The notes beneath the pieces are model-generated. The model was not told the origin of the DNA, ran no database searches, and worked only from the letters and a program-made list of their open reading frames with translations. From positions 1 through 64,000 of IMG/VR virus record IMGVR_UViG_3300010938_000951: a DNA stretch of 64,000 bases. One strand, written 5' to 3'. Positions 8,532-63,988 of the stretch are shown piece after piece. The position numbers and the translations under genes were made by a program. Position 1 is the stretch's first letter. Every line of letters begins with the position of its first letter.

Positions 8532-8822
8532 ATGAAAGTTTATTTATTAACAATATTTTTGTGTGCCTGCGCTACAGGGGTTTCCGATCCAATTGATGAT
8601 CCTGTAGTAGAAATTCCTGAGAATAAATCTGCTCCTAAACCAGCACCAACAACACCTTCTGCTTCTTCTTGTGAGGTAGATAGTTATTGGTCGGGTAATT
8701 GTTTTATTAAAAAGACTTATTGTTCTAATCAATTAGAACGAATTGATGTAATGTGTGATAGGGGCAGAAAGCTGTTTCCCTGGGAATATATTCCTGATCC
8801 TCCATTTGATGGTACAAAATAA
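8532..8822 (+). CDS. putative lipoprotein
   Basis: hydrophobic N-terminus with LCAC lipobox-like site, Pro-rich linker. Confidence 0.55.
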   Translation: MKVYLLTIFLCACATGVSDPIDDPVVEIPENKSAPKPAPTTPSASSCEVDSYWSGNCFIKKTYCSNQLERIDVMCDRGRKLFPWEYIPDPPFDGTK

Positions 8823-24999: not shown

Positions 25000-25290
25000 A
25001 TGTCTAATACTGTTCGTAATGAAATGAGCCGTCTTGCTCAACAGATTGAAAATCTTGCTCGTCAAGTGCAAGATAAGATTGCATCTGGCACAGACTATAA
25101 CGGTCTAATCACAACTGCCAATGAACTTGTTCGTAATAGCAGCGTGTTTGTTTTCACCTTTGGTGAAATGGCTGCTCTTGAAGAGACTGTTAAAAAGGTG
25201 AAGACTACTGTTGTTAGTAATCCTAACAACACTAAACCTCGTAACTATCACAACGTCCGTGACTCCTTGGGACGTTTCAGCCGAGTGTAA
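25000..25290 (+). CDS. hypothetical protein
   Basis: AGGAG RBS; ends RDSLGRF. Confidence 0.6.
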   Translation: MSNTVRNEMSRLAQQIENLARQVQDKIASGTDYNGLITTANELVRNSSVFVFTFGEMAALEETVKKVKTTVVSNPNNTKPRNYHNVRDSLGRFSRV

Positions 25291-25535
25291 TGCAAAACGA
25301 TAAGTTAACCGAAGCGTTAGCTGTGATTCCTGTCATCATAATGATGACTCTTATTGACGTTCTTATCGCCTCGATTGTATCCATTACATTCTTTTTACAT
25401 CTTGTGTTAGTGATGGAGATATCAAAAGGCGTTTCTTTGGGGATGGCTATTCTTGTGGCCATAGCTGTACTGGCGTATATTCGCTTTCAGCCAAACATGA
25501 GAAAATATATAGACACGAGGAGTCGTAAAGTATGA
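25290..25535 (+). CDS. small membrane protein
   Basis: hydrophobic; coupled start and stop. Confidence 0.5.
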   Translation: MQNDKLTEALAVIPVIIMMTLIDVLIASIVSITFFLHLVLVMEISKGVSLGMAILVAIAVLAYIRFQPNMRKYIDTRSRKV

Positions 25536-25966
25536 GTGTACCATTACATATTCAATCTTACTTAGATAGTAAAATCTCTATTTTTCAAGTTGTGGACGAA
25601 GTTCTTGATGCTTGGAATGGAGAAGGTTGCCTTCAGTTCCCAACCCTAATGGGAACTGTAAATGCCAAGATGGGCTGGACAGACAAAGAAGGTGAGAAAC
25701 TTTCTAGAGCTAATGAGCCTATCATCCGTGACTACGTTCGTAACCATCCTAACTGGTATGTTACGCGCGGTGCTCATGGTGGTATTATGAGGGCATCTGA
25801 TAAACAAAAGAAAGAAGAAGCAAAAGCGGCAAAAGAAAAAGCTAAAGCTGAATTGGCTGCCGCTATTGAGGCAGAAGTGGCCCGTAAGAAGGCTGAAGCT
25901 GCCGCTTCTCAGACAACTGCATCACCTGCAATTGTTACAGACAATACCAATATTGATTCCGAATAA
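25532..25966 (+). CDS. hypothetical protein (YVTRGxxGGI family)
   Basis: motif shared with 60542..60874. Confidence 0.6.
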   Translation: MSVPLHIQSYLDSKISIFQVVDEVLDAWNGEGCLQFPTLMGTVNAKMGWTDKEGEKLSRANEPIIRDYVRNHPNWYVTRGAHGGIMRASDKQKKEEAKAAKEKAKAELAAAIEAEVARKKAEAAASQTTASPAIVTDNTNIDSE

Positions 25967-40359: not shown

Positions 40360-40566
40360 ATGTGTGCGGTATCTGTGATTTATGATATGTTTGGCAAGCA
40401 GCCTGATGATTGGTATACACTAGACCGCATTGATTTGTTTAAACGCATGGTGGCTGACGCTAAAGTTTTTGATGAAGAATCTGGTCAGCCCGATTGTGAA
40501 GATCCTGAAAAAGCAAAAATTACTGAACGTATAGAAAATCTAGAAAAAGAATTAGAGCAAAAATAA
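40360..40566 (+). CDS. small conserved phage protein
   Basis: MCAVSVIYD...QPDCEDPEK. Confidence 0.55.
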   Translation: MCAVSVIYDMFGKQPDDWYTLDRIDLFKRMVADAKVFDEESGQPDCEDPEKAKITERIENLEKELEQK

Positions 40567-41087
40567 TGTGCAAAGCTATTTACGCTGGTACGTTTGATCC
40601 TATCACTTTCGGTCATATGGATATTATTAAACGTACTATGCAGTTCGCTAGAGAATTAGTGATTGTAGTTGGAATTAATTCAAATAAACAAACTCTTTTT
40701 ACAGAAGAAGAACGAATTAATTTGATTAATAAATCATTTGATTCTGAAATAGATTTTCTAACGGGCACCAATATTAAAGTAGTTTCTTATCAAGGGTTGA
40801 TGGTAAGCTATGCTAAAGAAATTGGTGCATCTATAATGGTTAGAGGTATTAGATCAGTTTCTGATTTTGAATATGAAATCAACTTAGCTAATGTTAATAA
40901 AACCTTAGCACCAGATATAGAGACTGTCTTTTTACCAACTCGTCCTGAACTAGCTGTTGTTTCTTCTTCGATGGTTAAGGAGATTGCTAAGTTTAATAGA
41001 GATATTAAACAGTATGTTCCAGGCTGTGTAGCAGAAGCAATAGTTTCTAAATTTGGTTTTGTCAAGTTTGGGGAGCCGCAAAAATAA
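40566..41087 (+). CDS. coaD: phosphopantetheine adenylyltransferase
   Basis: YAGTFDPITFGHMDII, RGIRSVSDFEYE, VSSSMVKEIA. Confidence 0.95.
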   Translation: MCKAIYAGTFDPITFGHMDIIKRTMQFARELVIVVGINSNKQTLFTEEERINLINKSFDSEIDFLTGTNIKVVSYQGLMVSYAKEIGASIMVRGIRSVSDFEYEINLANVNKTLAPDIETVFLPTRPELAVVSSSMVKEIAKFNRDIKQYVPGCVAEAIVSKFGFVKFGEPQK

Positions 41088-41202: not shown

Positions 41203-41285
41203 GGGGGAGTAGCTCAGAGAAAGAGCGCAAGGAGTCCGTAAGGAAAACCTTGAGGTCCCAGGTTTAATTCCTGGCTCCCCCACCA
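41203..41285 (+). ncRNA. tRNA-like RNA with anticodon loop replaced by a GNRA hairpin
   Basis: GGGGGAG/CTCCCCC-ACCA; CAAGG[AG-TCC-GTAA-GGA-AAA]CCTTG. Confidence 0.75.
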
Positions 41286-41326: not shown

Positions 41327-41403
41327 GGGACAGTAGCTCAGTGTTAGAGCACCGGCCTTTAACTGCCGGGGGTCGCTGGTTCAACTCCATGCCTGTCCCA
41401 CCA
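41327..41403 (+). tRNA. atypical tRNA with 8-nt anticodon loop CTTTAACT (identity undetermined)
   Basis: GGGACAG/CTGTCCC-ACCA; bulged T stem. Confidence 0.65.
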
Positions 41404-41463
41404 AACCGAATGCAAGTAGGATTACATCGGATTAAAAATAATCTTACTAACCTTTCGTCGGTT
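41404..41463 (+). ncRNA. Y-like scaffold RNA 1 (no cargo)
   Basis: AACCGA/TCGGTT and AGTAGGATTA/TAATCTTACT stems; CCGAATG and GGATTACAT motifs. Confidence 0.7.
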
Positions 41464-41465
41464 AT

Positions 41466-41875: not shown

Positions 41876-41951
41876 GGCCCTGTCGTCTAATGGATAGGAT
41901 AAGAGACTTTCACCCTCTTGATGTTGGGTTCGATTCCCACCAGGGTCGCCA
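41876..41951 (+). tRNA. tRNA-Glu(TTC)
   Basis: cloverleaf, loop CTTTCAC, GCCA. Confidence 0.88.
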
Positions 41952-42059
41952 TGACGAATGCCCGAAAGGGTTTACATTGTATGCGAAACAATCCGATGGA
42001 GTTCGATTCTCCTTTAAGGCTGGTGCCAGGTAAAACAACTCTTTCATTATTAGTCGTCA
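41952..42059 (+). ncRNA. Y-like scaffold RNA 2 (anticodon arm GCG plus T arm)
   Basis: TGACGA/TCGTCA, GAAAGGGTT/AACTCTTTC; ATTGT-ATGCGAA-ACAAT; GGAG-TTCGATT-CTCC. Confidence 0.75.
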
Positions 42060-42061
42060 AT

Positions 42062-42403: not shown

Positions 42404-42536
42404 TCAGCAAATGCCTGTAGGGATTACATTGCATTTGGAGCACGAGGAGAAGGTCCGATTCCTTCCGGCCCGACCATATCGGGACGAGGTGTTATGGCAG
42501 CACGCGTAAAAATAGTCTCTCAATTCTTGTTGCTGA
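42404..42536 (+). ncRNA. Y-like scaffold RNA 4 (circularly permuted Pro-type tRNA)
   Basis: TCAGCAA/TTGCTGA scaffold; order anticodon, T arm, CGGCCCG-ACCA, CGGGACG, D arm. Confidence 0.8.
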
Positions 42537-42815: not shown

Positions 42816-42889
42816 TCCGAGGTCGTTCAAAGGCAGGACGGGTCGCTGTTAACGACTCTATGTTGGTTCGATTCCAGCCCTCGGAGCCA
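42816..42889 (+). tRNA. tRNA-Asn(GTT)
   Basis: cloverleaf, loop CTGTTAA. Confidence 0.92.
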
Positions 42890-42892
42890 TAT

Positions 42893-42979
42893 TCTGCGGT
42901 AGCCTAATGGTAAGGCAGGCGGCTGTTAACCGCCCGGTGGTAAAACACTTTCTAGGTTCGAGTCCTAGCTGCAGAGCCA
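42893..42979 (+). tRNA. tRNA-Asn(GTT) with long variable arm
   Basis: loop CTGTTAA; extra arm GGTG-GTAAAA-CACT. Confidence 0.85.
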
Positions 42980-42987
42980 AATAATAC

Positions 42988-43342
42988 GGGGACTGATTAG
43001 ACTGGAATGATCCGTATTAGGTGTTGCGTTTGGTCAGTTCTGCGCAACGACAGGAGTTGTCACCGGAACTTTAACCCGGCCAATCTTCTGAGATGAATGC
43101 GGTAAGGACTACATTACTAATAGCGATCCGCAAGGACAACCCACTCCTTTACAGTACACAAGAGCGGTAGAAAATGCAAACTGAGTACCTGACAAACTTG
43201 ATAACCAGTAAAGCTTCAAGTGTAGGCGGTGAACTACTAAAATTTGCTGCGGACCTTATCGATATCCATAACAGGACTCTTTAAGCAAACCCGCTGTCTT
43301 TACTACCTCTTGTATTGAAATACAAGTTCTTGTCATCAATCT
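42988..43342 (+). ncRNA. unknown ~350-nt structured RNA
   Basis: no ORF; long-range pairings GACAGGAGTTGT/ACAAGTTCTTGTC and ACAAGAG(C)GGTAG/CTACCTCTTGT. Confidence 0.5.
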
Positions 43343-43344
43343 AT

Positions 43345-43419
43345 TCCGCTCTAGTGTAATTAGCACGACGATCCTTTTTCGGGTCGGGGGTCATGGTTCG
43401 AGTCCATGGGGCGGAGCCA
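43345..43419 (+). tRNA. atypical tRNA (T-rich anticodon loop, identity undetermined)
   Basis: TCCGCTC/GGGCGGA-GCCA; arm CGATC-CTTTTTCG-GGTCG. Confidence 0.65.
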
Positions 43420-44132: not shown

Positions 44133-44207
44133 GGTCCCGTCGTTCAATGGTTAGGACAGCACCTTGTCACGGTGCATACGAGGGTTCGATTCCCTTCGGG
44201 ACCGCCA
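44133..44207 (+). tRNA. tRNA-Asp(GTC)
   Basis: cloverleaf, loop TTGTCAC. Confidence 0.92.
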
Positions 44208-44216
44208 GCATATAAT

Positions 44217-44291
44217 GCCTCCGTACGCATCTGGTGAAGCGGGGTGATTGTCAATCATCTGAGGGCGGTTCGATTCCGCTCGGGGGCGCCA
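44217..44291 (+). tRNA. tRNA-Asp(GTC)
   Basis: cloverleaf, loop TTGTCAA. Confidence 0.85.
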
Positions 44292-44362
44292 AGCCAAATG
44301 CCTTGATAGGATTACATTGAACTGTTAATTCAAACCTATATCTTATCTAATTTTTGTTGGCT
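44292..44362 (+). ncRNA. Y-like scaffold RNA 5 (isolated Asn anticodon stem-loop)
   Basis: AGCCAA/TTGGCT, GATAGGAT/ATCTTATC; cargo TTGAA-CTGTTAA-TTCAA. Confidence 0.8.
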
Positions 44363-44366
44363 ACAT

Positions 44367-44525: not shown

Positions 44526-44557
44526 AATGATAATCTTGCGCAAGATTATCAGATAAA

Positions 44558-44702
44558 GACAGAATGCCCCGAAGGAATACATAGAACAGCAATTGAATGA
44601 AAATCAATAGATTGTAGGTGCGAATCCTACCTCTCCCACCAATAATAAGATATATGGGAGGGAAGCTAAATAAAACAAACTTCTTTCAAATCTTTGTCTG
44701 TC
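44558..44702 (+). ncRNA. Y-like scaffold RNA 6 (circularly permuted tRNA-Phe)
   Basis: GACAGA/TCTGTC; ATTGA-ATGAAAA-TCAAT, T arm, CTCTCCC-ACCA, linker, GGGAGGG. Confidence 0.8.
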
Positions 44703-44705
44703 AAT

Positions 44706-44781
44706 GGAGCTTGAGCAAGTGTGGTCATTGCATCGGTCTGAAAAGCCGACAAATCCGGTTCGATCCCGGAAGGCTCCACCA
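44706..44781 (+). tRNA. tRNA-Phe(GAA)
   Basis: loop CTGAAAA, CCA. Confidence 0.85.
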
Positions 44782-44790
44782 ACTACCAAT

Positions 44791-44865
44791 GGTCCTGTAG
44801 CTCAGTGGTAGAGCGCTTGCCTGAAGAGCAGGGCGTCGGGGGTTCAATTCCCTCCGGGACCACCA
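44791..44865 (+). tRNA. tRNA-Phe(GAA)
   Basis: loop CTGAAGA, CCA. Confidence 0.92.
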
Positions 44866-45219: not shown

Positions 45220-45394
45220 AATAGTAGAGTTAGAAATTGAAAGACTTTCTTTATTAGAAGTAGTAAGGCAATTTACAATACATGATTGCGATGCAAGAAT
45301 GTGGTGTGAACTAAATGAATTCTTAATAAAGATTGAAGAAAGAGCAGAAGAAATAAATCGTGCCATAGCTCAGTTGGTTAGAGCGCATGTCTGA
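45203..45394 (+). CDS. hypothetical protein overlapping tRNA-Ile
   Basis: short ORF. Confidence 0.4.
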   Translation: MTIKDKIVELEIERLSLLEVVRQFTIHDCDARMWCELNEFLIKIEERAEEINRAIAQLVRAHV

Positions 45395-45435
45395 TACACA
45401 TGAGGTCGCAGGTTCGACTCCCGCTGGCACGACCA
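45359..45435 (+). tRNA. tRNA-Ile(GAT)
   Basis: loop CTGATAC, CCA. Confidence 0.92.
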
Positions 45436-45444
45436 AGATAACAT

Positions 45445-45519
45445 GGGATGTTAGTTCAACGGTGAGAACGGAAGTCCGATAAACTTCAGACAATGGTTCA
45501 ACTCCATTACATCCTACCA
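45445..45519 (+). tRNA. tRNA-Ile(GAT), C33 variant
   Basis: GAAGT-CCGATAA-ACTTC, CCA. Confidence 0.8.
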
Positions 45520-45520
45520 C

Positions 45521-45660
45521 TGAAACAAATGCTCGCAGAGGATTACATCGCATATCCAGCGGGTTACGTGAGTGCGAATCTCACTCTCAGCTCATTATGC
45601 TGAGATCGTCTAGCAGTCTAGGACACCTAAAAAATAGTCTTCTCAATTCTTGTTGTTTCA
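45521..45660 (+). ncRNA. Y-like scaffold RNA 7 (circularly permuted Gly-type tRNA)
   Basis: TGAAACAA/TTGTTTCA; CGC-ATATCCA-GCG, T arm, TCTCAGC/GCTGAGA, D arm. Confidence 0.8.
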
Positions 45661-45667
45661 CAATTAT

Positions 45668-45863
45668 GCCTCCTATCATGGCTGGAAACTGATAGCGATA
45701 CCACCAGGCGGTCCCAGAGGGATGCAGCAGGGGAAGTACAAGAGTATCAAACAGAAGGGACGCCTTCTAGCCTGCTCACATGGTTGGAAACTGTGACGCG
45801 GTCTTGGTCGCGATAGACCAAGTAGTAAAACCGCAAGCCTGCCCACATGGTCGGAAACTGTGG
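45668..45863 (+). repeat. three copies of a hairpin with conserved core CATGGYYGGAAACTG
   Basis: copies at 45668, 45770 and 45837 with co-varying stems. Confidence 0.75.
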
Positions 45864-45866
45864 AAA

Positions 45867-45943
45867 GAATCGTCTAGCTCAATGGTAGAGCTACGTCACT
45901 AGTGACGACGTGGATCTGGGTTCGAATCCCAGGATGATTCCCA
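45867..45943 (+). tRNA. His-like tRNA (G-1:C73) with 9-nt anticodon loop
   Basis: GAATCGTC/GATGATTC-CCA; ACGTC-ACTAGTGAC-GACGT. Confidence 0.7.
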
Positions 45944-45945
45944 GC

Positions 45946-46097
45946 GAAGCAAATGCCCCGAAGGTTTACATTTGAGAAACTGTATTATCGCAAGATAGTC
46001 GTGGGTTCGAATCCCACATCACCGCAAGGTGATTGGCTGAGTGGTCTAAAGCGACAGTGCCGCAAGGCATGCTAACTTTCAAATTTTTTGTTGCTTC
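45946..46097 (+). ncRNA. Y-like scaffold RNA 8 (YrlA-like, permuted class II tRNA)
   Basis: GAAGCAA/TTGCTTC; variable arm, GTGGG-TTCGAAT-CCCAC, acceptor ATCACC-GCAA-GGTGAT, D arm. Confidence 0.85.
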
Positions 46098-51713: not shown

Positions 51714-51725
51714 AGTAAGCGTTAT

Positions 51726-51801
51726 GGGGCTGTAGCTCAGTTGGGAGAGCGTCTCGTTTGCACCGAGAAGGTCAGGGGTTTGAATCCCCTCAGCTCCACC
51801 A
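51726..51801 (+). tRNA. tRNA-Ala(TGC)
   Basis: G3:U70, loop TTTGCAC. Confidence 0.93.
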
Positions 51802-51939
51802 TAACTCACTGGCCGGATACGAAACACAATTCGCGAATGTTTCATTATGTTATCCGGTGTCAGATTGAGTAAAAGTTTGGCGATGTACAACTCGCTACAA
51901 GTCCTGGACATGACTTGGATACGGAAACTGTCCGGTAAT

Positions 51940-52015
51940 GGGGCCTTAGCTCAATTGGGAGAGCGTCACGCTGGCAGTGTGAAGGTCGCGGGTTCGACCC
52001 CCGCAGGCTCCACCA
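51940..52015 (+). tRNA. tRNA-Ala(GGC)
   Basis: G3:U70, loop CTGGCAG. Confidence 0.93.
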
Positions 52016-52018
52016 TAT

Positions 52019-52117
52019 ATCCCGCAATTCGATATAATCTCTGCTGGCTGTCTTATCGCGGCTGAACATAGGTTGGCACGGACAGAGAACAAGGTGCAAT
52101 TCCTTGGCGGGATACCA
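52019..52117 (+). ncRNA. tRNA-like RNA (acceptor, T arm and CCA; non-canonical core)
   Basis: ATCCCGC/GCGGGAT-ACCA; CAAGG-TGCAATT-CCTTG; CTCTG/CAGAG encloses ~40 nt. Confidence 0.65.
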
Positions 52118-53137: not shown

Positions 53138-53297
53138 GCAACAAATGCCAGCTAGGATTACATAGCTCGCAACTATTTTCCCCGCCAGCCCGAGAGGGCA
53201 AATAAACTTTTATTTTTTATGTTACTAACACGGGGAAATGTTCAAGTCGGTCTGAAAAACCGATAAGGAACTCTTCTTGGCACCTTTAGTTGTTGCT
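53137..53297 (+). ncRNA. Y-like scaffold RNA 9 (two anticodon-like stem-loops)
   Basis: AGCAACAA/TTGTTGCT, GGATTACAT; ATAG-CTCGCAA-CTAT and TCGGT-CTGAAAA-ACCGA. Confidence 0.7.
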
Positions 53298-53303
53298 AAA
53301 TAT

Positions 53304-53404
53304 AGCAGATTGGAGCAGCGGTAGCTCGCCAGGTTCACAATGGGGCTGATGCCCTATAAGGATACCCTGGAGGTCGTGTGGTTCGATTCCCTCATCTGCA
53401 ACCA
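53304..53404 (+). tRNA. initiator-type tRNA-Met with 25-nt insert in the anticodon
   Basis: 1:72 mismatch, TGGAGCAG..GGTAGCTCG D arm; CCAGG-TTCA[25 nt]TAC-CCTGG. Confidence 0.8.
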
Positions 53405-57830: not shown

Positions 57831-58169
57831 GTGAAAGTTATGAGCTTACCTTGGTCACGAGATATGCAATTAGATCCTGGCACATTTGGAGGGTCTCCAG
57901 CATGTCATGTATTAGTTGATATGATGAACAAAAATGTGATTCCTGTTCAGGAAAAACATCGAGTTCTATCATTCATTAGCGGTACTATTTTGCATTTCAA
58001 GGCCATCTCTGCCATCAAAGAAAGAGGTATAAGGGCACGGGTTATGGTGCTTTTGAAAAATGATCTGTTTTCCAGAATAGATCAAATGCCATATCCAGCT
58101 CATTTCAACTCTTATCTGAAGAACGTAGTAAATCACCACTTCAGGCGATACTTAAAAGAAGTAGTCTAG
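57831..58169 (+). CDS. hypothetical protein
   Basis: ORF whose end overlaps RNase P helix P1. Confidence 0.5.
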   Translation: MKVMSLPWSRDMQLDPGTFGGSPACHVLVDMMNKNVIPVQEKHRVLSFISGTILHFKAISAIKERGIRARVMVLLKNDLFSRIDQMPYPAHFNSYLKNVVNHHFRRYLKEVV

Positions 58170-58488
58170 ACAATCGCTCTGCAAGGAGAGGAAAGTCGGA
58201 GCTACATAGGACAGTCTGCTGGCTAACGGCCAGGCGTAGTAATACGACGGAAAGTGCAACAGAAAATAAACCGCCCGCAAGGGTAAGGGTGAAATGGTGA
58301 GGTAAGAGCTTACCGCATGTTTGGCGACAAATATGGCAAGGCAAACCCCAGATGTAGCAAGCTAAACAGAGAGTGACTTGTCCGGTCAATACTCTCGGGT
58401 TAGTGCTGGAGCCGTCAAGTAATTGTCGGCCAAGATTAATGATTGTCTCGATTTATAGACAGAACTCCGCTTATAGGGCTACTTCTTT
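58155..58488 (+). ncRNA. rnpB: RNase P RNA (bacterial type A)
   Basis: P1 AAGAAGTAGTC/GGCTACTTCTT; GAGGAAAGTCGGAGC, GGAAAGTGCAACAGAAA, GGGTGAAA..GGTAAGAGC, GGCAAACCCC, ACAGAACTCCGCTTA with compensatory P4. Confidence 0.95.
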
Positions 58489-58510
58489 TAAGTTCTTTTA
58501 AGGAATTATT

Positions 58511-63898: not shown

Positions 63899-63988
63899 GG
63901 AAACTTGGCCGAGCGGTTTAAGGCGCTAGTCTTGAAAACTAGAGATCCTGAAAGGGGTCCGGGGGTTCGAATCCCTCAGTTTCCGCCA
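63899..63988 (+). tRNA. tRNA-Ser(TGA)
   Basis: loop CTTGAAA, long variable arm, GCCA. Confidence 0.95.

What the first reader, a model, noticed from the sequence alone, without database searches (positions are those of the whole stretch)
45946..46097. YrlA-like element with a class II tRNA body sealed by three GCAA tetraloops
Seen: TTGAGAA-ACTGT, variable arm ATTATC-GCAA-GATAGT, canonical T arm, acceptor ATCACC-GCAA-GGTGAT with no CCA, Ser-like D arm, ACAGT, then GCC-GCAA-GGC. This is the member closest to the known YrlA topology (T, closed acceptor, D), which anchors the family call. It also keeps a long variable arm and the anticodon loop sequence.
Basis: partly seen in the sequence, partly recalled or inferred. 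Interest (0 to 1): 0.65.

Follow-up and report, generated by a model that had tools for sequence, protein, structure and literature searches.

The report
Phage Y RNA with permuted tRNA body
The element is a real, divergent YrlA-type Y RNA: a Ro60-binding stem carrying a circularly permuted class II tRNA, one of at least 11 related RNAs that fill the gaps between tRNA genes of a giant phage that also encodes Ro60.

Summary
When the two halves are joined in tRNA order in silico, ARAGORN folds them as a class II tRNA; none of 2000 shuffles does.

The window is the first 64 kb of a 267-kb phage record with 65 tRNAs, an RNase P RNA and a Ro60 homologue (33424-35115).

The element belongs to a family of at least 11 inter-tRNA spacers in this genome and 42 copies in 8 viral records. 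All share a terminal stem P1, a 5' AUGC junction, a stem P2 followed by UUACAU, and a 3' junction ending in UUG. Both stems covary strongly. A model built without this element finds it at 46 bits, at exactly the reported ends.

That model also hits clusters of RNAs next to Ro60 genes in four bacteria. Rfam YrlA scores several of these same RNAs at 37-63 bits over its full length. The shared core is therefore the Ro60-binding module of YrlA.

Rfam alone gives this element only 26 bits (threshold 69), and it lies 10.8 kb from Ro60. Ro60 binding and expression were not tested.

Phage Ro60 with Y RNAs, long variable loops in YrlA, and an origin from tRNA dimers are already published. New here are the placement inside a tRNA array, the many copies with different centres, and the Ser-like D arm.

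The parts
33424..35115 (+). Ro60 (TROVE + Ro60-type vWA) homologue, the presumed protein partner. The start codon is uncertain.
   Evidence: Pfam vWA_Ro60 55.4 bits and TROVE 39.7 bits. Near full-length matches to solved Ro60 structures: 9KOP phage phiLo E 1.4e-15, 2NVO D. radiodurans Rsr 2.8e-13, and 9NEN (deposited as RNA-binding protein RO60) 4.8e-8.
45868..45943 (+). tRNA-Thr(AGU) with an encoded CCA. The element starts 2 nt after it.
   Evidence: ARAGORN and Rfam tRNA 48.1 bits.
45946..46097 (+). The whole Y RNA-like element (called H in this report).
   Evidence: Family model R2, built without H, matches exactly these ends at 46.3 bits, E 3.6e-8.
45946..45952 (+). P1 5' strand GAAGCAA. 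It pairs with 46091-46097.
   Evidence: Sequence. P1 covaries across 40 distinct copies: all 7 pairs have changes on both sides and 91% of cells pair.
45953..45959 (+). 5' junction AUGCCCC. With the preceding CAA it corresponds to the GNCGAAN0-1G Ro60-binding motif region of YrlA; here it reads GCAAAUG.
   Evidence: AAUGC is invariant in the seed alignment. The Rfam YrlA consensus reads cggCgaA-UGCu. The motif is described in PMC4201824.
45960..45966 (+). P2 5' strand GAAGGUU. It pairs with 46074-46080.
   Evidence: Present in the MFE and centroid folds. P2 covaries: 6 of 7 pairs have changes on both sides. The A-U pair common in the family is flipped to U-A in H.
45966..45971 (+). UUACAU, the family-wide conserved motif. 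Its UUAC matches the YUAY motif of YrlA. CAU can pair with AUG at 46069-46071.
   Evidence: TTACAT is invariant in the seed. YUAY is described in PMC4201824. The energy with the CAU/AUG pairing is -43.1 kcal/mol.
45972..45978 (+). UUGAGAA, a junction strand that reads as a 7-nt anticodon loop (GAG) once the halves are joined in tRNA order.
   Evidence: ARAGORN on the re-joined sequence calls tRNA-Leu(gag).
45979..45983 (+). Anticodon-stem 3' strand ACUGU. It pairs with ACAGU at 46054-46058.
45984..45999 (+). Long variable arm: 6 bp plus a GCAA tetraloop.
   Evidence: Present in the MFE and centroid folds; ARAGORN cloverleaf.
46001..46017 (+). T arm GUGGG-UUCGAAU-CCCAC.
   Evidence: Aligned to the YrlA T arm; present in the MFE fold.
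46018..46033 (+). Closed acceptor stem (AS): 6 bp capped by GCAA, with no discriminator base and no CCA.
   Evidence: Aligned to the YrlA AS; present in the MFE fold.
46036..46052 (+). D arm of class II type: a 3-bp stem GCU/AGC with the loop GAGUGGUCUAA.
   Evidence: Aligned to the YrlA D arm with one non-standard pair. ARAGORN cloverleaf. The best match among the phage's own tRNAs is tRNA-Ser(UGA) at 63899-63988.
46054..46058 (+). Anticodon-stem 5' strand ACAGU.
46059..46068 (+). Extra hairpin GCC-GCAA-GGC at the junction between the tRNA body and P2.
   Evidence: Present in the centroid fold; included in the energy evaluation.
46074..46080 (+). P2 3' strand AACUUUC.
46081..46090 (+). 3' junction AAAUUUUUUG. 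It matches the family consensus aUcAAUUUUUG and the YrlA consensus aAaAcUuG.
46091..46097 (+). P1 3' strand UUGCUUC.
41403..41464 (+). Family member A: minimal, with no tRNA-like centre.
   Evidence: R2 53.8 bits.
41951..42060 (+). Family member B: a T-arm-like hairpin only.
   Evidence: R2 73 bits.
42404..42536 (+). Family member C.
   Evidence: R2 62.3 bits.
43090..43339 (+). Family member D: long centre and a weak model score. It was recognised from its motifs and its terminal stem.
   Evidence: R2 7.7 bits, E 5.5; sequence.
44291..44363 (+). Family member E: minimal.
   Evidence: R2 58 bits.
44557..44703 (+). Family member F.
   Evidence: R2 31.8 bits.
45522..45659 (+). Family member G.
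   Evidence: R2 57.7 bits.
53138..53296 (+). Family member I.
   Evidence: R2 27.7 bits.
58158..58489 (+). Phage-encoded bacterial type A RNase P RNA, the likely ribozyme that cuts at the tRNA 5' ends bounding these spacers.
   Evidence: Rfam RF00010 279.9 bits. Conserved in related records G001 and G004.

Best explanation
The element is a YrlA-type Y RNA encoded by a giant phage.

Its paired 5' and 3' ends form the module that in YrlA binds Ro60/Rsr. This module consists of P1, an asymmetric internal loop (5' AUGC and 3' AAUUUUUUG), P2, and then UUAC.

Its centre is a circularly permuted class II tRNA, in the order variable arm, T arm, tetraloop-closed acceptor, Ser-like D arm and 5-bp anticodon stem. 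It keeps the tRNA tertiary-contact positions: U8, A14, G15 with C48, G18-G19, the loop UUCGAAU, and G53-C61. It should therefore fold into an L shape with no free CCA end.

Inferred mechanism:
1. The RNA is transcribed with the tRNA array.
2. It is freed by the enzymes that trim the neighbouring tRNAs. Its start lies 2 nt after the CCA of tRNA-Thr, and the phage carries its own RNase P RNA.
3. It binds the phage Ro60 through the stem module.
4. Its tRNA-shaped domain serves as a nuclease-resistant handle that recruits a tRNA-binding protein or host PNPase. This would direct Ro60 to RNA decay, RNA repair or tRNA quality control during infection.

Shown here: the sequence anatomy, family covariation, homology of the core to Ro60-adjacent YrlA RNAs, and the presence of Ro60 in the phage.

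Inferred, not shown: transcription, processing, Ro60 binding and the downstream effector.
For: - Anatomy and tRNA-likeness.
- Partial Rfam YrlA alignment covering T, AS and D arms.
- Covariation: across 42 copies in 8 viral records, 87.7% of P1/P2 cells pair against 64.8% in shuffles. There are 128 double-change cells against 40.6 in shuffles. Slid controls pair in 64% of cells or fewer.
- Genome-wide placement: every R2 hit in five whole phage records lies in tRNA-gene clusters, on the strand of Ro60 and the tRNAs.
- Link to Ro60: all 7 viral contigs with a Ro60 at 65-86% identity carry family members downstream. Cultured Myxococcus phage Mx1 has a Ro60 at 52% identity and two members.
- Link to YrlA: R2 hits 11 elements at E<0.01 directly adjacent to Ro60 genes, on the same strand, in Neisseria sp., two Brucella species and a Hyphomicrobium MAG. 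Rfam YrlA scores 9 elements at these loci at 37-63 bits over the full model, 8 of them also among the R2 hits at E<0.01.
- Ro60 identity of the phage protein.
- Published precedent: phage Ro60 binds phage Y RNA-like RNAs and host PNPase in Thermus phage phiLo (PMC12135203). YrlA features are described in PMC4201824 and 10.1101/312249.
Against: - The Rfam YrlA score is 26.3 bits against a gathering score of 69, and only model positions 26-82 align.
- The literal GNCGAA motif reads GCAAA here, with A in place of G.
- The element is 10.8 kb from Ro60. The published search criterion was 4 kb.
- No orthologue keeps this tRNA-like centre. In the closest relative, G001, the same scaffold after the same tRNA-Thr holds a GIY-YIG endonuclease gene instead. 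The centre is therefore not conserved and has no covariation support of its own.
Confidence: 0.72

Rival explanations
1. It is a structured spacer that only helps tRNA maturation. The spacers would fold to present neighbouring tRNAs to RNase P and the 3'-end processing enzymes, or to insulate them, and would have no partner of their own.
For: Nine of 11 copies in this genome start 0-2 nt after the 3' end of an upstream tRNA, and 7 of 11 end 2-6 nt before the next tRNA. The phage has its own RNase P RNA.
Against: The same conserved core occurs next to Ro60 genes in four bacterial loci that have no tRNA gene within 13 kb. The junction letters are conserved in sequence, not only in pairing, which points to a specific binding partner.
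Confidence: 0.1
2. The tRNA-like centre is a decaying relic. A rearranged or duplicated class II tRNA landed in a Y RNA scaffold, and the cargo has no function.
For: The cargo is not conserved: relative G001 has a GIY-YIG gene at the same place. No close copy of the cargo was found in five related records. The best match to the phage's own tRNAs is only 63 of 83 positions.
Against: All tRNA tertiary-contact positions are intact. All six helices of the centre (the five of the tRNA body and the extra junction hairpin) are intact apart from one G-U pair, and three are capped by GNRA tetraloops. The acceptor is closed by exactly a tetraloop rather than by leftover spacer. The T and D stems stay close to the YrlA consensus. 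A second, unrelated viral contig (L152) has the same order of T arm, tetraloop-closed acceptor and class II D arm, with every stem changed in a compensatory way.
Confidence: 0.1
3. It is a permuted tRNA gene. The scaffold would bring the two ends of the anticodon loop together for ligation, and the acceptor loop would then be opened to give a working tRNA, as in red-alga permuted tRNAs.
For: The 3' half precedes the 5' half with a break in the anticodon loop, and the re-joined sequence passes ARAGORN as tRNA-Leu(gag). The resemblance of YrlA to permuted pre-tRNAs is noted in 10.1101/312249.
Against: The acceptor has 6 pairs, a 4-nt cap, no discriminator base and no CCA. About 12 nt and a hairpin sit where the loop would have to be joined. 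Minimal family members have the same scaffold with no tRNA part at all. The phage already has tRNA-Leu(gag) at genome position 125251-125334.
Confidence: 0.03
4. It is a mobile element or a homing-endonuclease landing pad, with the paired ends acting as DNA inverted repeats rather than as an RNA stem.
For: A GIY-YIG gene sits inside the orthologous scaffold in G001. HNH and GIY-YIG genes are scattered through the array.
Against: The P1 sequences differ between copies while staying complementary, including G-U pairs, which only matter in RNA. All copies are on one strand. The core is shared with Ro60-adjacent YrlA RNAs.
Confidence: 0.03

Closest known systems
YrlA (Rfam RF02553; S. Typhimurium, M. 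smegmatis, mycobacteriophages; PMC4201824, 10.1101/312249)
   Same: The order of parts is the same: terminal stem with the CGAA/AUGC motif region, second stem, YUAY, variable loop, T arm, closed acceptor, D arm, return strand, and a 3' junction ending in UUG. The tRNA tertiary positions are kept and there is no free CCA. A Ro60 gene lies on the same strand. Long class II-like variable loops are already reported for many YrlA RNAs.
   Different: - The score is 26 bits against a threshold of 69.
- The motif reads CAAAUG instead of CGAA(N)G.
- The D arm has a 3-bp stem and a Ser-like loop, instead of the nearly invariant GCUC...GAGC arm.
- There is an extra GCC-GCAA-GGC hairpin and a 12-nt strand at the junction.
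- It lies 10.8 kb from Ro60, inside a tRNA array, as one of at least 11 paralogues.
YrlB and other Y RNAs without a full tRNA-like domain (S. Typhimurium YrlB, D. radiodurans Yrn1)
   Same: The other family members here share the Ro60-type stem module. They have either no tRNA-like part or only a T-arm-like hairpin, as in Yrn1.
   Different: This element has the full T, acceptor and D set, so it corresponds to YrlA rather than to YrlB.
Yrl1 and Yrl2 of Thermus phage phiLo (PMC12135203)
   Same: They are phage-encoded Y RNA-like RNAs with a CGAA-type motif in a stem-bulge-stem. They were shown to bind the phage Ro60 and to form complexes with host PNPase. The Ro60 here matches that protein (9KOP) at E 1.4e-15.
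   Different: phiLo has two RNAs just upstream of Ro60. A tRNA-array setting and variable centres were not described there.
Circularly permuted tRNA genes (Cyanidioschyzon merolae and others)
   Same: The 3' half precedes the 5' half, the acceptor is initially closed, and the break is at the anticodon loop.
   Different: There is no sign of a joinable loop, no discriminator base and no 7-bp acceptor. The body is embedded in a Y RNA scaffold that also exists without any tRNA part.
Small stable RNAs in the phage T4 tRNA cluster (species 1 and 2; from my own knowledge, not checked here)
   Same: They are non-tRNA structured RNAs encoded between phage tRNA genes and released by tRNA-processing enzymes.
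   Different: No sequence relation was tested, and no Ro60 link is known for T4.

Membership tests
YrlA (RF02553) | Score at or above Rfam's gathering score (69 bits). | tested here: not met
   26.3 bits, model positions 26-82 only. Ro60-adjacent relatives in bacteria also stay below the threshold, at 37-63 bits.
YrlA (RF02553) | Permuted tRNA-like domain in the order T arm, closed acceptor stem-loop, D arm, with the tRNA tertiary-contact nucleotides. | tested here: met
   Aligned to the model's T, AS and D positions. ARAGORN cloverleaf of the re-joined halves. U8, A14, G15/C48, GG in the D loop, UUCGAAU and G53-C61 are read directly.
YrlA (RF02553) | GNCGAAN0-1G motif near the 5' end, the proposed Ro60 contact (PMC4201824). 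| tested here: inconclusive
   The element reads GAAGCAAAUGC, with CAAAUG where the motif has CGAAUG. Position 6 of P1 is G (as in CGAA) in 27 of 40 distinct family copies and A in 13. The same CAAAUGC variant occurs in a Ro60-adjacent RNA of Neisseria sp. that scores 61.1 bits with YrlA.
YrlA (RF02553) | Conserved YUAY at the start of the variable loop. | tested here: met
   UUAC at 45966-45969, within the family-invariant UUACAU.
YrlA (RF02553) | Encoded within 4 kb of a Ro60 orthologue and on the same strand (operational criterion of PMC4201824). | tested here: not met
   It is on the same strand, but the element starts 10.8 kb after the end of the Ro60 ORF at 35115.
YrlA (RF02553) | Bound by Ro60/Rsr in vivo or in vitro. 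| not testable with these tools
YrlA (RF02553) | T and D loops modified by TruB and DusA. | not testable with these tools
   This needs RNA from infected cells.
Phage tRNA-array Y RNA-like family (model R2, defined here) | A P1 stem and a P2 stem (14 modelled pairs in all), the 5' junction AAUGC, UUACAU after P2, and a 3' junction ending in UUG. | tested here: met
   46.3 bits, E 3.6e-8, full model 1-102, with a model that did not include the element.
Canonical class II tRNA | A contiguous cloverleaf with free 5' and 3' acceptor ends, a discriminator base and CCA. | tested here: not met
   Neither ARAGORN nor Rfam tRNA calls it in native order. The acceptor is capped by GCAA.
Permuted tRNA gene | Ends that can be joined to restore the anticodon loop, plus an intervening acceptor sequence that can be removed to leave a 7-bp stem and a discriminator base. 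| tested here: not met
   The stem has 6 bp and a 4-nt cap with no discriminator. The loop side carries 12 nt plus a hairpin and runs into P2.

The most novel reading that the evidence does not exclude
The phage clade related to Myxococcus phage Mx1 may run a modular Y RNA adaptor array. A dozen Y RNAs share one Ro60-binding stem but carry different centres: none, a T arm only, a full permuted class II tRNA, other folds, and in one case a homing-endonuclease gene. They would be transcribed between tRNAs and cut out by tRNA-processing enzymes, including a phage-encoded RNase P RNA. One phage Ro60 could then be directed to several different RNA or protein targets during infection, for example quality control of the phage's own 65 tRNAs or defence against host tRNA-cutting systems. 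The element studied here would also be a living intermediate for the proposed origin of YrlA from tRNA dimers.
Probability: 0.3. Interest if true: 0.75.

Novelty: new variant of a known kind. Interest (0 to 1): 0.52.

Why it matters
[quoted passage not shown] This phage clade offers natural variation on one scaffold: the same Ro60-type stem with many different centres, including a complete class II tRNA body with a Ser-like D arm. That variation can be used to ask which parts recruit which partners.

The setting between tRNA genes, together with a phage RNase P RNA, gives a concrete and testable route for how Y RNAs are made. It also fits the published idea that YrlA arose from tRNA dimers.

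Myxococcus phage Mx1 is a cultured phage that has both Ro60 and two family members, so experiments are possible.

The work also shows that Rfam's YrlA model misses this subfamily, and that it places even the Ro60-adjacent copies in Neisseria, Brucella and Hyphomicrobium below its threshold.

Tried and rejected
- **Other Rfam YrlA hits in the genome.** The hits at 128025-128139 (36.9 bits) and 42839-42939 are junctions between tandem tRNA genes, not Y RNAs. This is the false-positive type that PMC4201824 warns about.
- **Local hairpin reading of the 5' motif.** I first read it as AUG-CCC-GAAA-GGG-UUUA-CAU. The minimal members and covariation favour long-range pairing of GGAUU with the 3' AAUCU, which is P2.
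- **Collection-wide scan with the 5' motif.** The 14-base pattern gave 118 stretches, nearly all chance matches. Only L112 and L120 were real members.
- **DNA search for orthologues of the tRNA-like centre.** In five related records it found only T-arm-level matches and tandem tRNA-Ser genes.
- **Promoter and terminator scans of the array.** They were no better than shuffles.
- **Supplementary tables of PMC4201824.** They are not held in the library.
- This was an unfinished script with no result.

Full report
**What the window is**

The window is the first 64 kb of a 266,899-base IMG/VR virus record. ARAGORN finds 65 tRNA genes in the record, 31 of them in the window, and nearly all on the + strand in arrays. 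Rfam finds a bacterial type A RNase P RNA at 58158-58489 (279.9 bits).

An ORF at 33424-35115 carries the TROVE and Ro60-type vWA domains. It aligns over nearly its full length to solved Ro60 structures: Thermus phage phiLo 9KOP at E 1.4e-15, D. radiodurans Rsr 2NVO at 2.8e-13, and the chain 9NEN (deposited as RNA-binding protein RO60) at 4.8e-8.

**The observation**

In order:
- GAAGCAA (P1 5' strand)
- AUGCCCC
- GAAGGUU (P2 5' strand)
- UACAU
- UUGAGAA
- ACUGU
- variable arm AUUAUC-GCAA-GAUAGU
- C
- T arm GUGGG-UUCGAAU-CCCAC
- closed acceptor AUCACC-GCAA-GGUGAU
- UG
- D arm GCU-GAGUGGUCUAA-AGC
- G
- ACAGU
- GCC-GCAA-GGC
- AUGCU
- AACUUUC (P2 3' strand)
- AAAUUUUUUG
- UUGCUUC (P1 3' strand)

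The element starts 2 nt after the encoded CCA of tRNA-Thr(AGU), which spans 45868-45943.

I joined the segment from the acceptor 5' strand to ACAGU to the segment from UUGAGAA to the acceptor 3' strand. ARAGORN folds the result as a class II tRNA, reading it as Leu(gag). It has a 6-bp acceptor, a 3-bp D stem, a 5-bp anticodon stem, a 7-nt loop, a 6-bp variable arm and a canonical T arm. None of 2000 shuffles gives a tRNA call.

The complete proposed structure has -43.1 kcal/mol, against an MFE of -43.7. The MFE and centroid folds already contain P1, P2 and the variable, T and acceptor hairpins. The phage's own tRNA most like it is tRNA-Ser(UGA) at 63899-63988, with 63 of 83 positions identical. 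It is therefore not a recent copy.

**The family**

The element is not alone. The gaps between tRNA genes hold a repeated design. Each copy has:
- a terminal stem whose two strands differ between copies but stay complementary;
- an invariant AAUGC just after the 5' strand;
- a conserved GGAUUACAU;
- a 3' stretch of the form UCUYUCAAUUYUUG just before the 3' strand.

Minimal copies of 56-70 nt in this and related phages show that GGAUU pairs with the 3' AAUCU to form P2.

I built a covariance model from nine minimal copies (R1). A search with it over this and related loci gave 30 matches, and these 30 copies became the second model (R2). This element was not among the 30. R2 finds it at 46.3 bits, E 3.6e-8, at exactly 45946-46097.

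In all there are 42 copies in 8 viral records. On that alignment:
- 87.7% of P1/P2 cells pair, against 64.8% after shuffling;
- 13 of 14 pairs show changes on both sides;
- there are 128 double-change cells, against 40.6 expected;
- sliding the 3' partner by 1-3 columns drops pairing to 35-64%.

In whole-record scans every hit lies in tRNA-gene clusters, on the strand of the tRNAs and Ro60.

This genome has at least 11 copies. Eight lie in the window at 41403, 41951, 42404, 43090, 44291, 44557, 45522 and 53138, besides the element itself. Two more lie at genome positions 79688 and 79892. Nine start 0-2 nt after an upstream tRNA, and seven end 2-6 nt before the next one.

**Link to YrlA and Ro60**

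Rfam YrlA aligns its T arm, acceptor and D arm (model positions 26-82) to 45996-46053. The score is 26.3 bits, well under the gathering score of 69. The two other YrlA hits in the genome are junctions between tandem tRNAs.

The printed Rfam consensus has the same layout as the family consensus:

| Part | Rfam YrlA | Phage family |
|---|---|---|
| P1 5' strand | cggCga | agcCGA |
| 5' junction | A-UGCu | AUGCcuaU |
| P2 5' strand | uggGgaa | aggGaUu |
| After P2 | CUA | ACAU, giving UUAC with the base before it |
| P2 3' strand | uucCcca | aAuCucu |
| 3' junction | aAaAcUuG | aUcAAUUUUUG |
| P1 3' strand | ucGccg | UCGgcu |

These are the features that Chen et al. describe as the GNCGAAN0-1G motif and the YUAY motif (PMC4201824).

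The decisive check was independent. The closest bacterial Ro60 homologues, at about 50% identity, are in Neisseria sp. HMSC078H04, Brucella pituitosa, Brucella cytisi and a Hyphomicrobium MAG. In all four, R2 hits a cluster of elements on the same strand directly beside the Ro60 gene, 11 of them at E<0.01. Rfam YrlA scores 9 elements at these loci at 37-63 bits over its full length, 8 of them also among the R2 hits at E<0.01. These loci contain no tRNA genes.

The phage family core is therefore the stem module of Ro60-adjacent YrlA RNAs, and it does not depend on tRNA neighbours. All seven viral contigs with a Ro60 at 65-86% identity carry family members downstream of it. The cultured Myxococcus phage Mx1, with a Ro60 at 52% identity, has two members in its tRNA array.

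**How it differs from described YrlA**

- The D arm has a 3-bp stem (GCU/AGC, with G and A where YrlA has the fourth pair) and the loop GAGUGGUCUAA, as in tRNA-Ser. YrlA has the nearly invariant arm GCUCA...GAGC.
- The T stem differs from the consensus by one compensated pair.
- An extra GCC-GCAA-GGC hairpin and a 12-nt strand sit where the tRNA body meets P2.
- The motif reads CAAAUG rather than CGAAUG. This variant is also found in the 61-bit Neisseria RNA.
- The element is 10.8 kb from Ro60.

Some features are not new. Long class II-like variable loops, tRNA neighbours, an origin from tRNA dimers and the likeness to permuted pre-tRNAs are all discussed in 10.1101/312249. Phage Ro60 with Y RNA-like partners is known from mycobacteriophages (PMC4201824) and from Thermus phage phiLo. 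In phiLo, binding to Ro60 and host PNPase was shown (PMC12135203).

**The centre is not conserved**

In the closest relative, G001 (Ro60 86% identical), the same tRNA-Thr is followed by the same 5' piece (GAAGCAAAUGCACCGAAGGU...) and the same 3' piece (GCAUGCUAACUUUCAAAUUUUUGUUGCUUC). Between them lies a 212-codon GIY-YIG endonuclease gene in place of the tRNA body. No close copy of the tRNA body was found in five related records.

One unrelated 5.4-kb viral contig (L152) has the same order of T arm, GAAA-capped acceptor and class II D arm, with all stems changed in a compensatory way. It scores 25.1 bits with YrlA over the full model.

The apical part of the scaffold thus behaves as a swappable slot. 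Other copies hold nothing, a T-arm-like hairpin, or other folds.

**Most likely mechanism**

The RNA is made as part of the tRNA-array transcript and trimmed free by tRNA-processing enzymes. It binds the phage Ro60 through the P1-junction-P2 module. It presents an L-shaped tRNA mimic with no CCA as a stable handle for a tRNA-binding partner or for PNPase, as proposed for YrlA.

Only the anatomy, the covariation, the homology and the gene content were shown here. Transcription, processing, binding and the effector are inferences. I could get no expression evidence.

**Rivals**

I considered four alternatives and give each low weight, for the reasons set out in the rival explanations:
- a pure processing spacer;
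- a decaying tRNA relic;
- a true permuted tRNA gene;
- a DNA mobile element.

**Verdict**

The element is a divergent member of the YrlA class. The new aspects are its class II D arm and, above all, its context: a multi-copy Y RNA family with variable centres, punctuated by tRNAs, in a clade of giant phages that also carry Ro60 and, in three of the records searched, an RNase P RNA.

Noticed in passing
window 58158-58489: A full-length bacterial type A RNase P RNA (279.9 bits) is encoded in a phage record. Related records G001 (36384-36715) and G004 (51723-52066) have it too. G003, G005 and Myxococcus phage Mx1 gave no hit.
   Followed up: partly
L138 1500-2210 (G001:C1, about 25195-25905): In the closest relative, the scaffold orthologous to this element holds a GIY-YIG homing-endonuclease ORF (Pfam 31.7 bits) in place of the tRNA-like centre. 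The ORF reads through the conserved UACAUUG of the scaffold.
   Followed up: partly
window 42816-42979, 44133-44291, 44706-44865, 45359-45519: Many tRNAs come as adjacent pairs with the same anticodon but different sequences (Asn/Asn, Asp/Asp, Phe/Phe, Ile/Ile). The same occurs elsewhere in the genome (His/His, Arg/Arg).
   Followed up: no
window 45669-45867 and 51912-51939: A second kind of repeated spacer motif occurs just upstream of tRNA-Thr and tRNA-Ala: hairpins such as CAUGG-UUGGAAA-CUGUG, a 7-nt loop containing GGAAAC. It is also conserved in G001. It does not belong to the Y RNA-like family, and its function is unknown.
   Followed up: no
window 41327-41403 and 43345-43419: For two tRNA-like genes ARAGORN reports four-base anticodons (ttaa, tttt). 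The first scores 53 bits with Rfam tRNA. They may be frameshift-type or otherwise odd tRNAs.
   Followed up: no
G000:C1:176544-176700 (outside the window): Two adjacent tRNAs have the anticodon CUA (amber suppressors; ARAGORN labels them Pyl). ORFs in the window read normally under table 11, so recoding was neither assumed nor tested.
   Followed up: no
window 41203-41282 and 53300-53400: The Rfam tRNA model hits 41203-41282 (52.4 bits), which ARAGORN does not call; it may carry an insert near the anticodon loop. The region after family member I (about 53300-53400) looks by eye like a tRNA with an internal insertion; no tool was run on it.
   Followed up: no
window 31936-33123, 36920-37780, 40566-41087: Ro60 is flanked by genes of NAD and ADP-ribose metabolism: a nucleoside deoxyribosyltransferase-like plus NUDIX fusion, a microbial PARG, and a cytidylyltransferase-like (NMNAT-type) protein. 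A GIY-YIG endonuclease lies at 37695-38318.
   Followed up: no
L153 5048-5815; L154 and L155 7543-7932; L156 7695-8312: Bacterial Ro60 genes in Neisseria sp. HMSC078H04, Brucella pituitosa, Brucella cytisi and a Hyphomicrobium MAG are flanked by tandem Y RNA-like elements (two to five per locus at E<0.01, up to seven counting weaker hits). All score below Rfam's YrlA threshold, and some are minimal with no tRNA-like domain.
   Followed up: partly
L151 8553-8656 (OR576727.2 45521-45624): In Myxococcus phage Mx1, one family member overlaps an annotated 'hypothetical protein' CDS (locus 8556-8678) directly after tRNA-Ile. That CDS is probably a mis-annotated RNA gene.
   Followed up: partly
L152 263-370: An unrelated 5.4-kb viral contig carries a YrlA-like RNA with a GAAA-capped acceptor and a class II D arm, just upstream of a tRNA-Ser(GCU).
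   Followed up: partly
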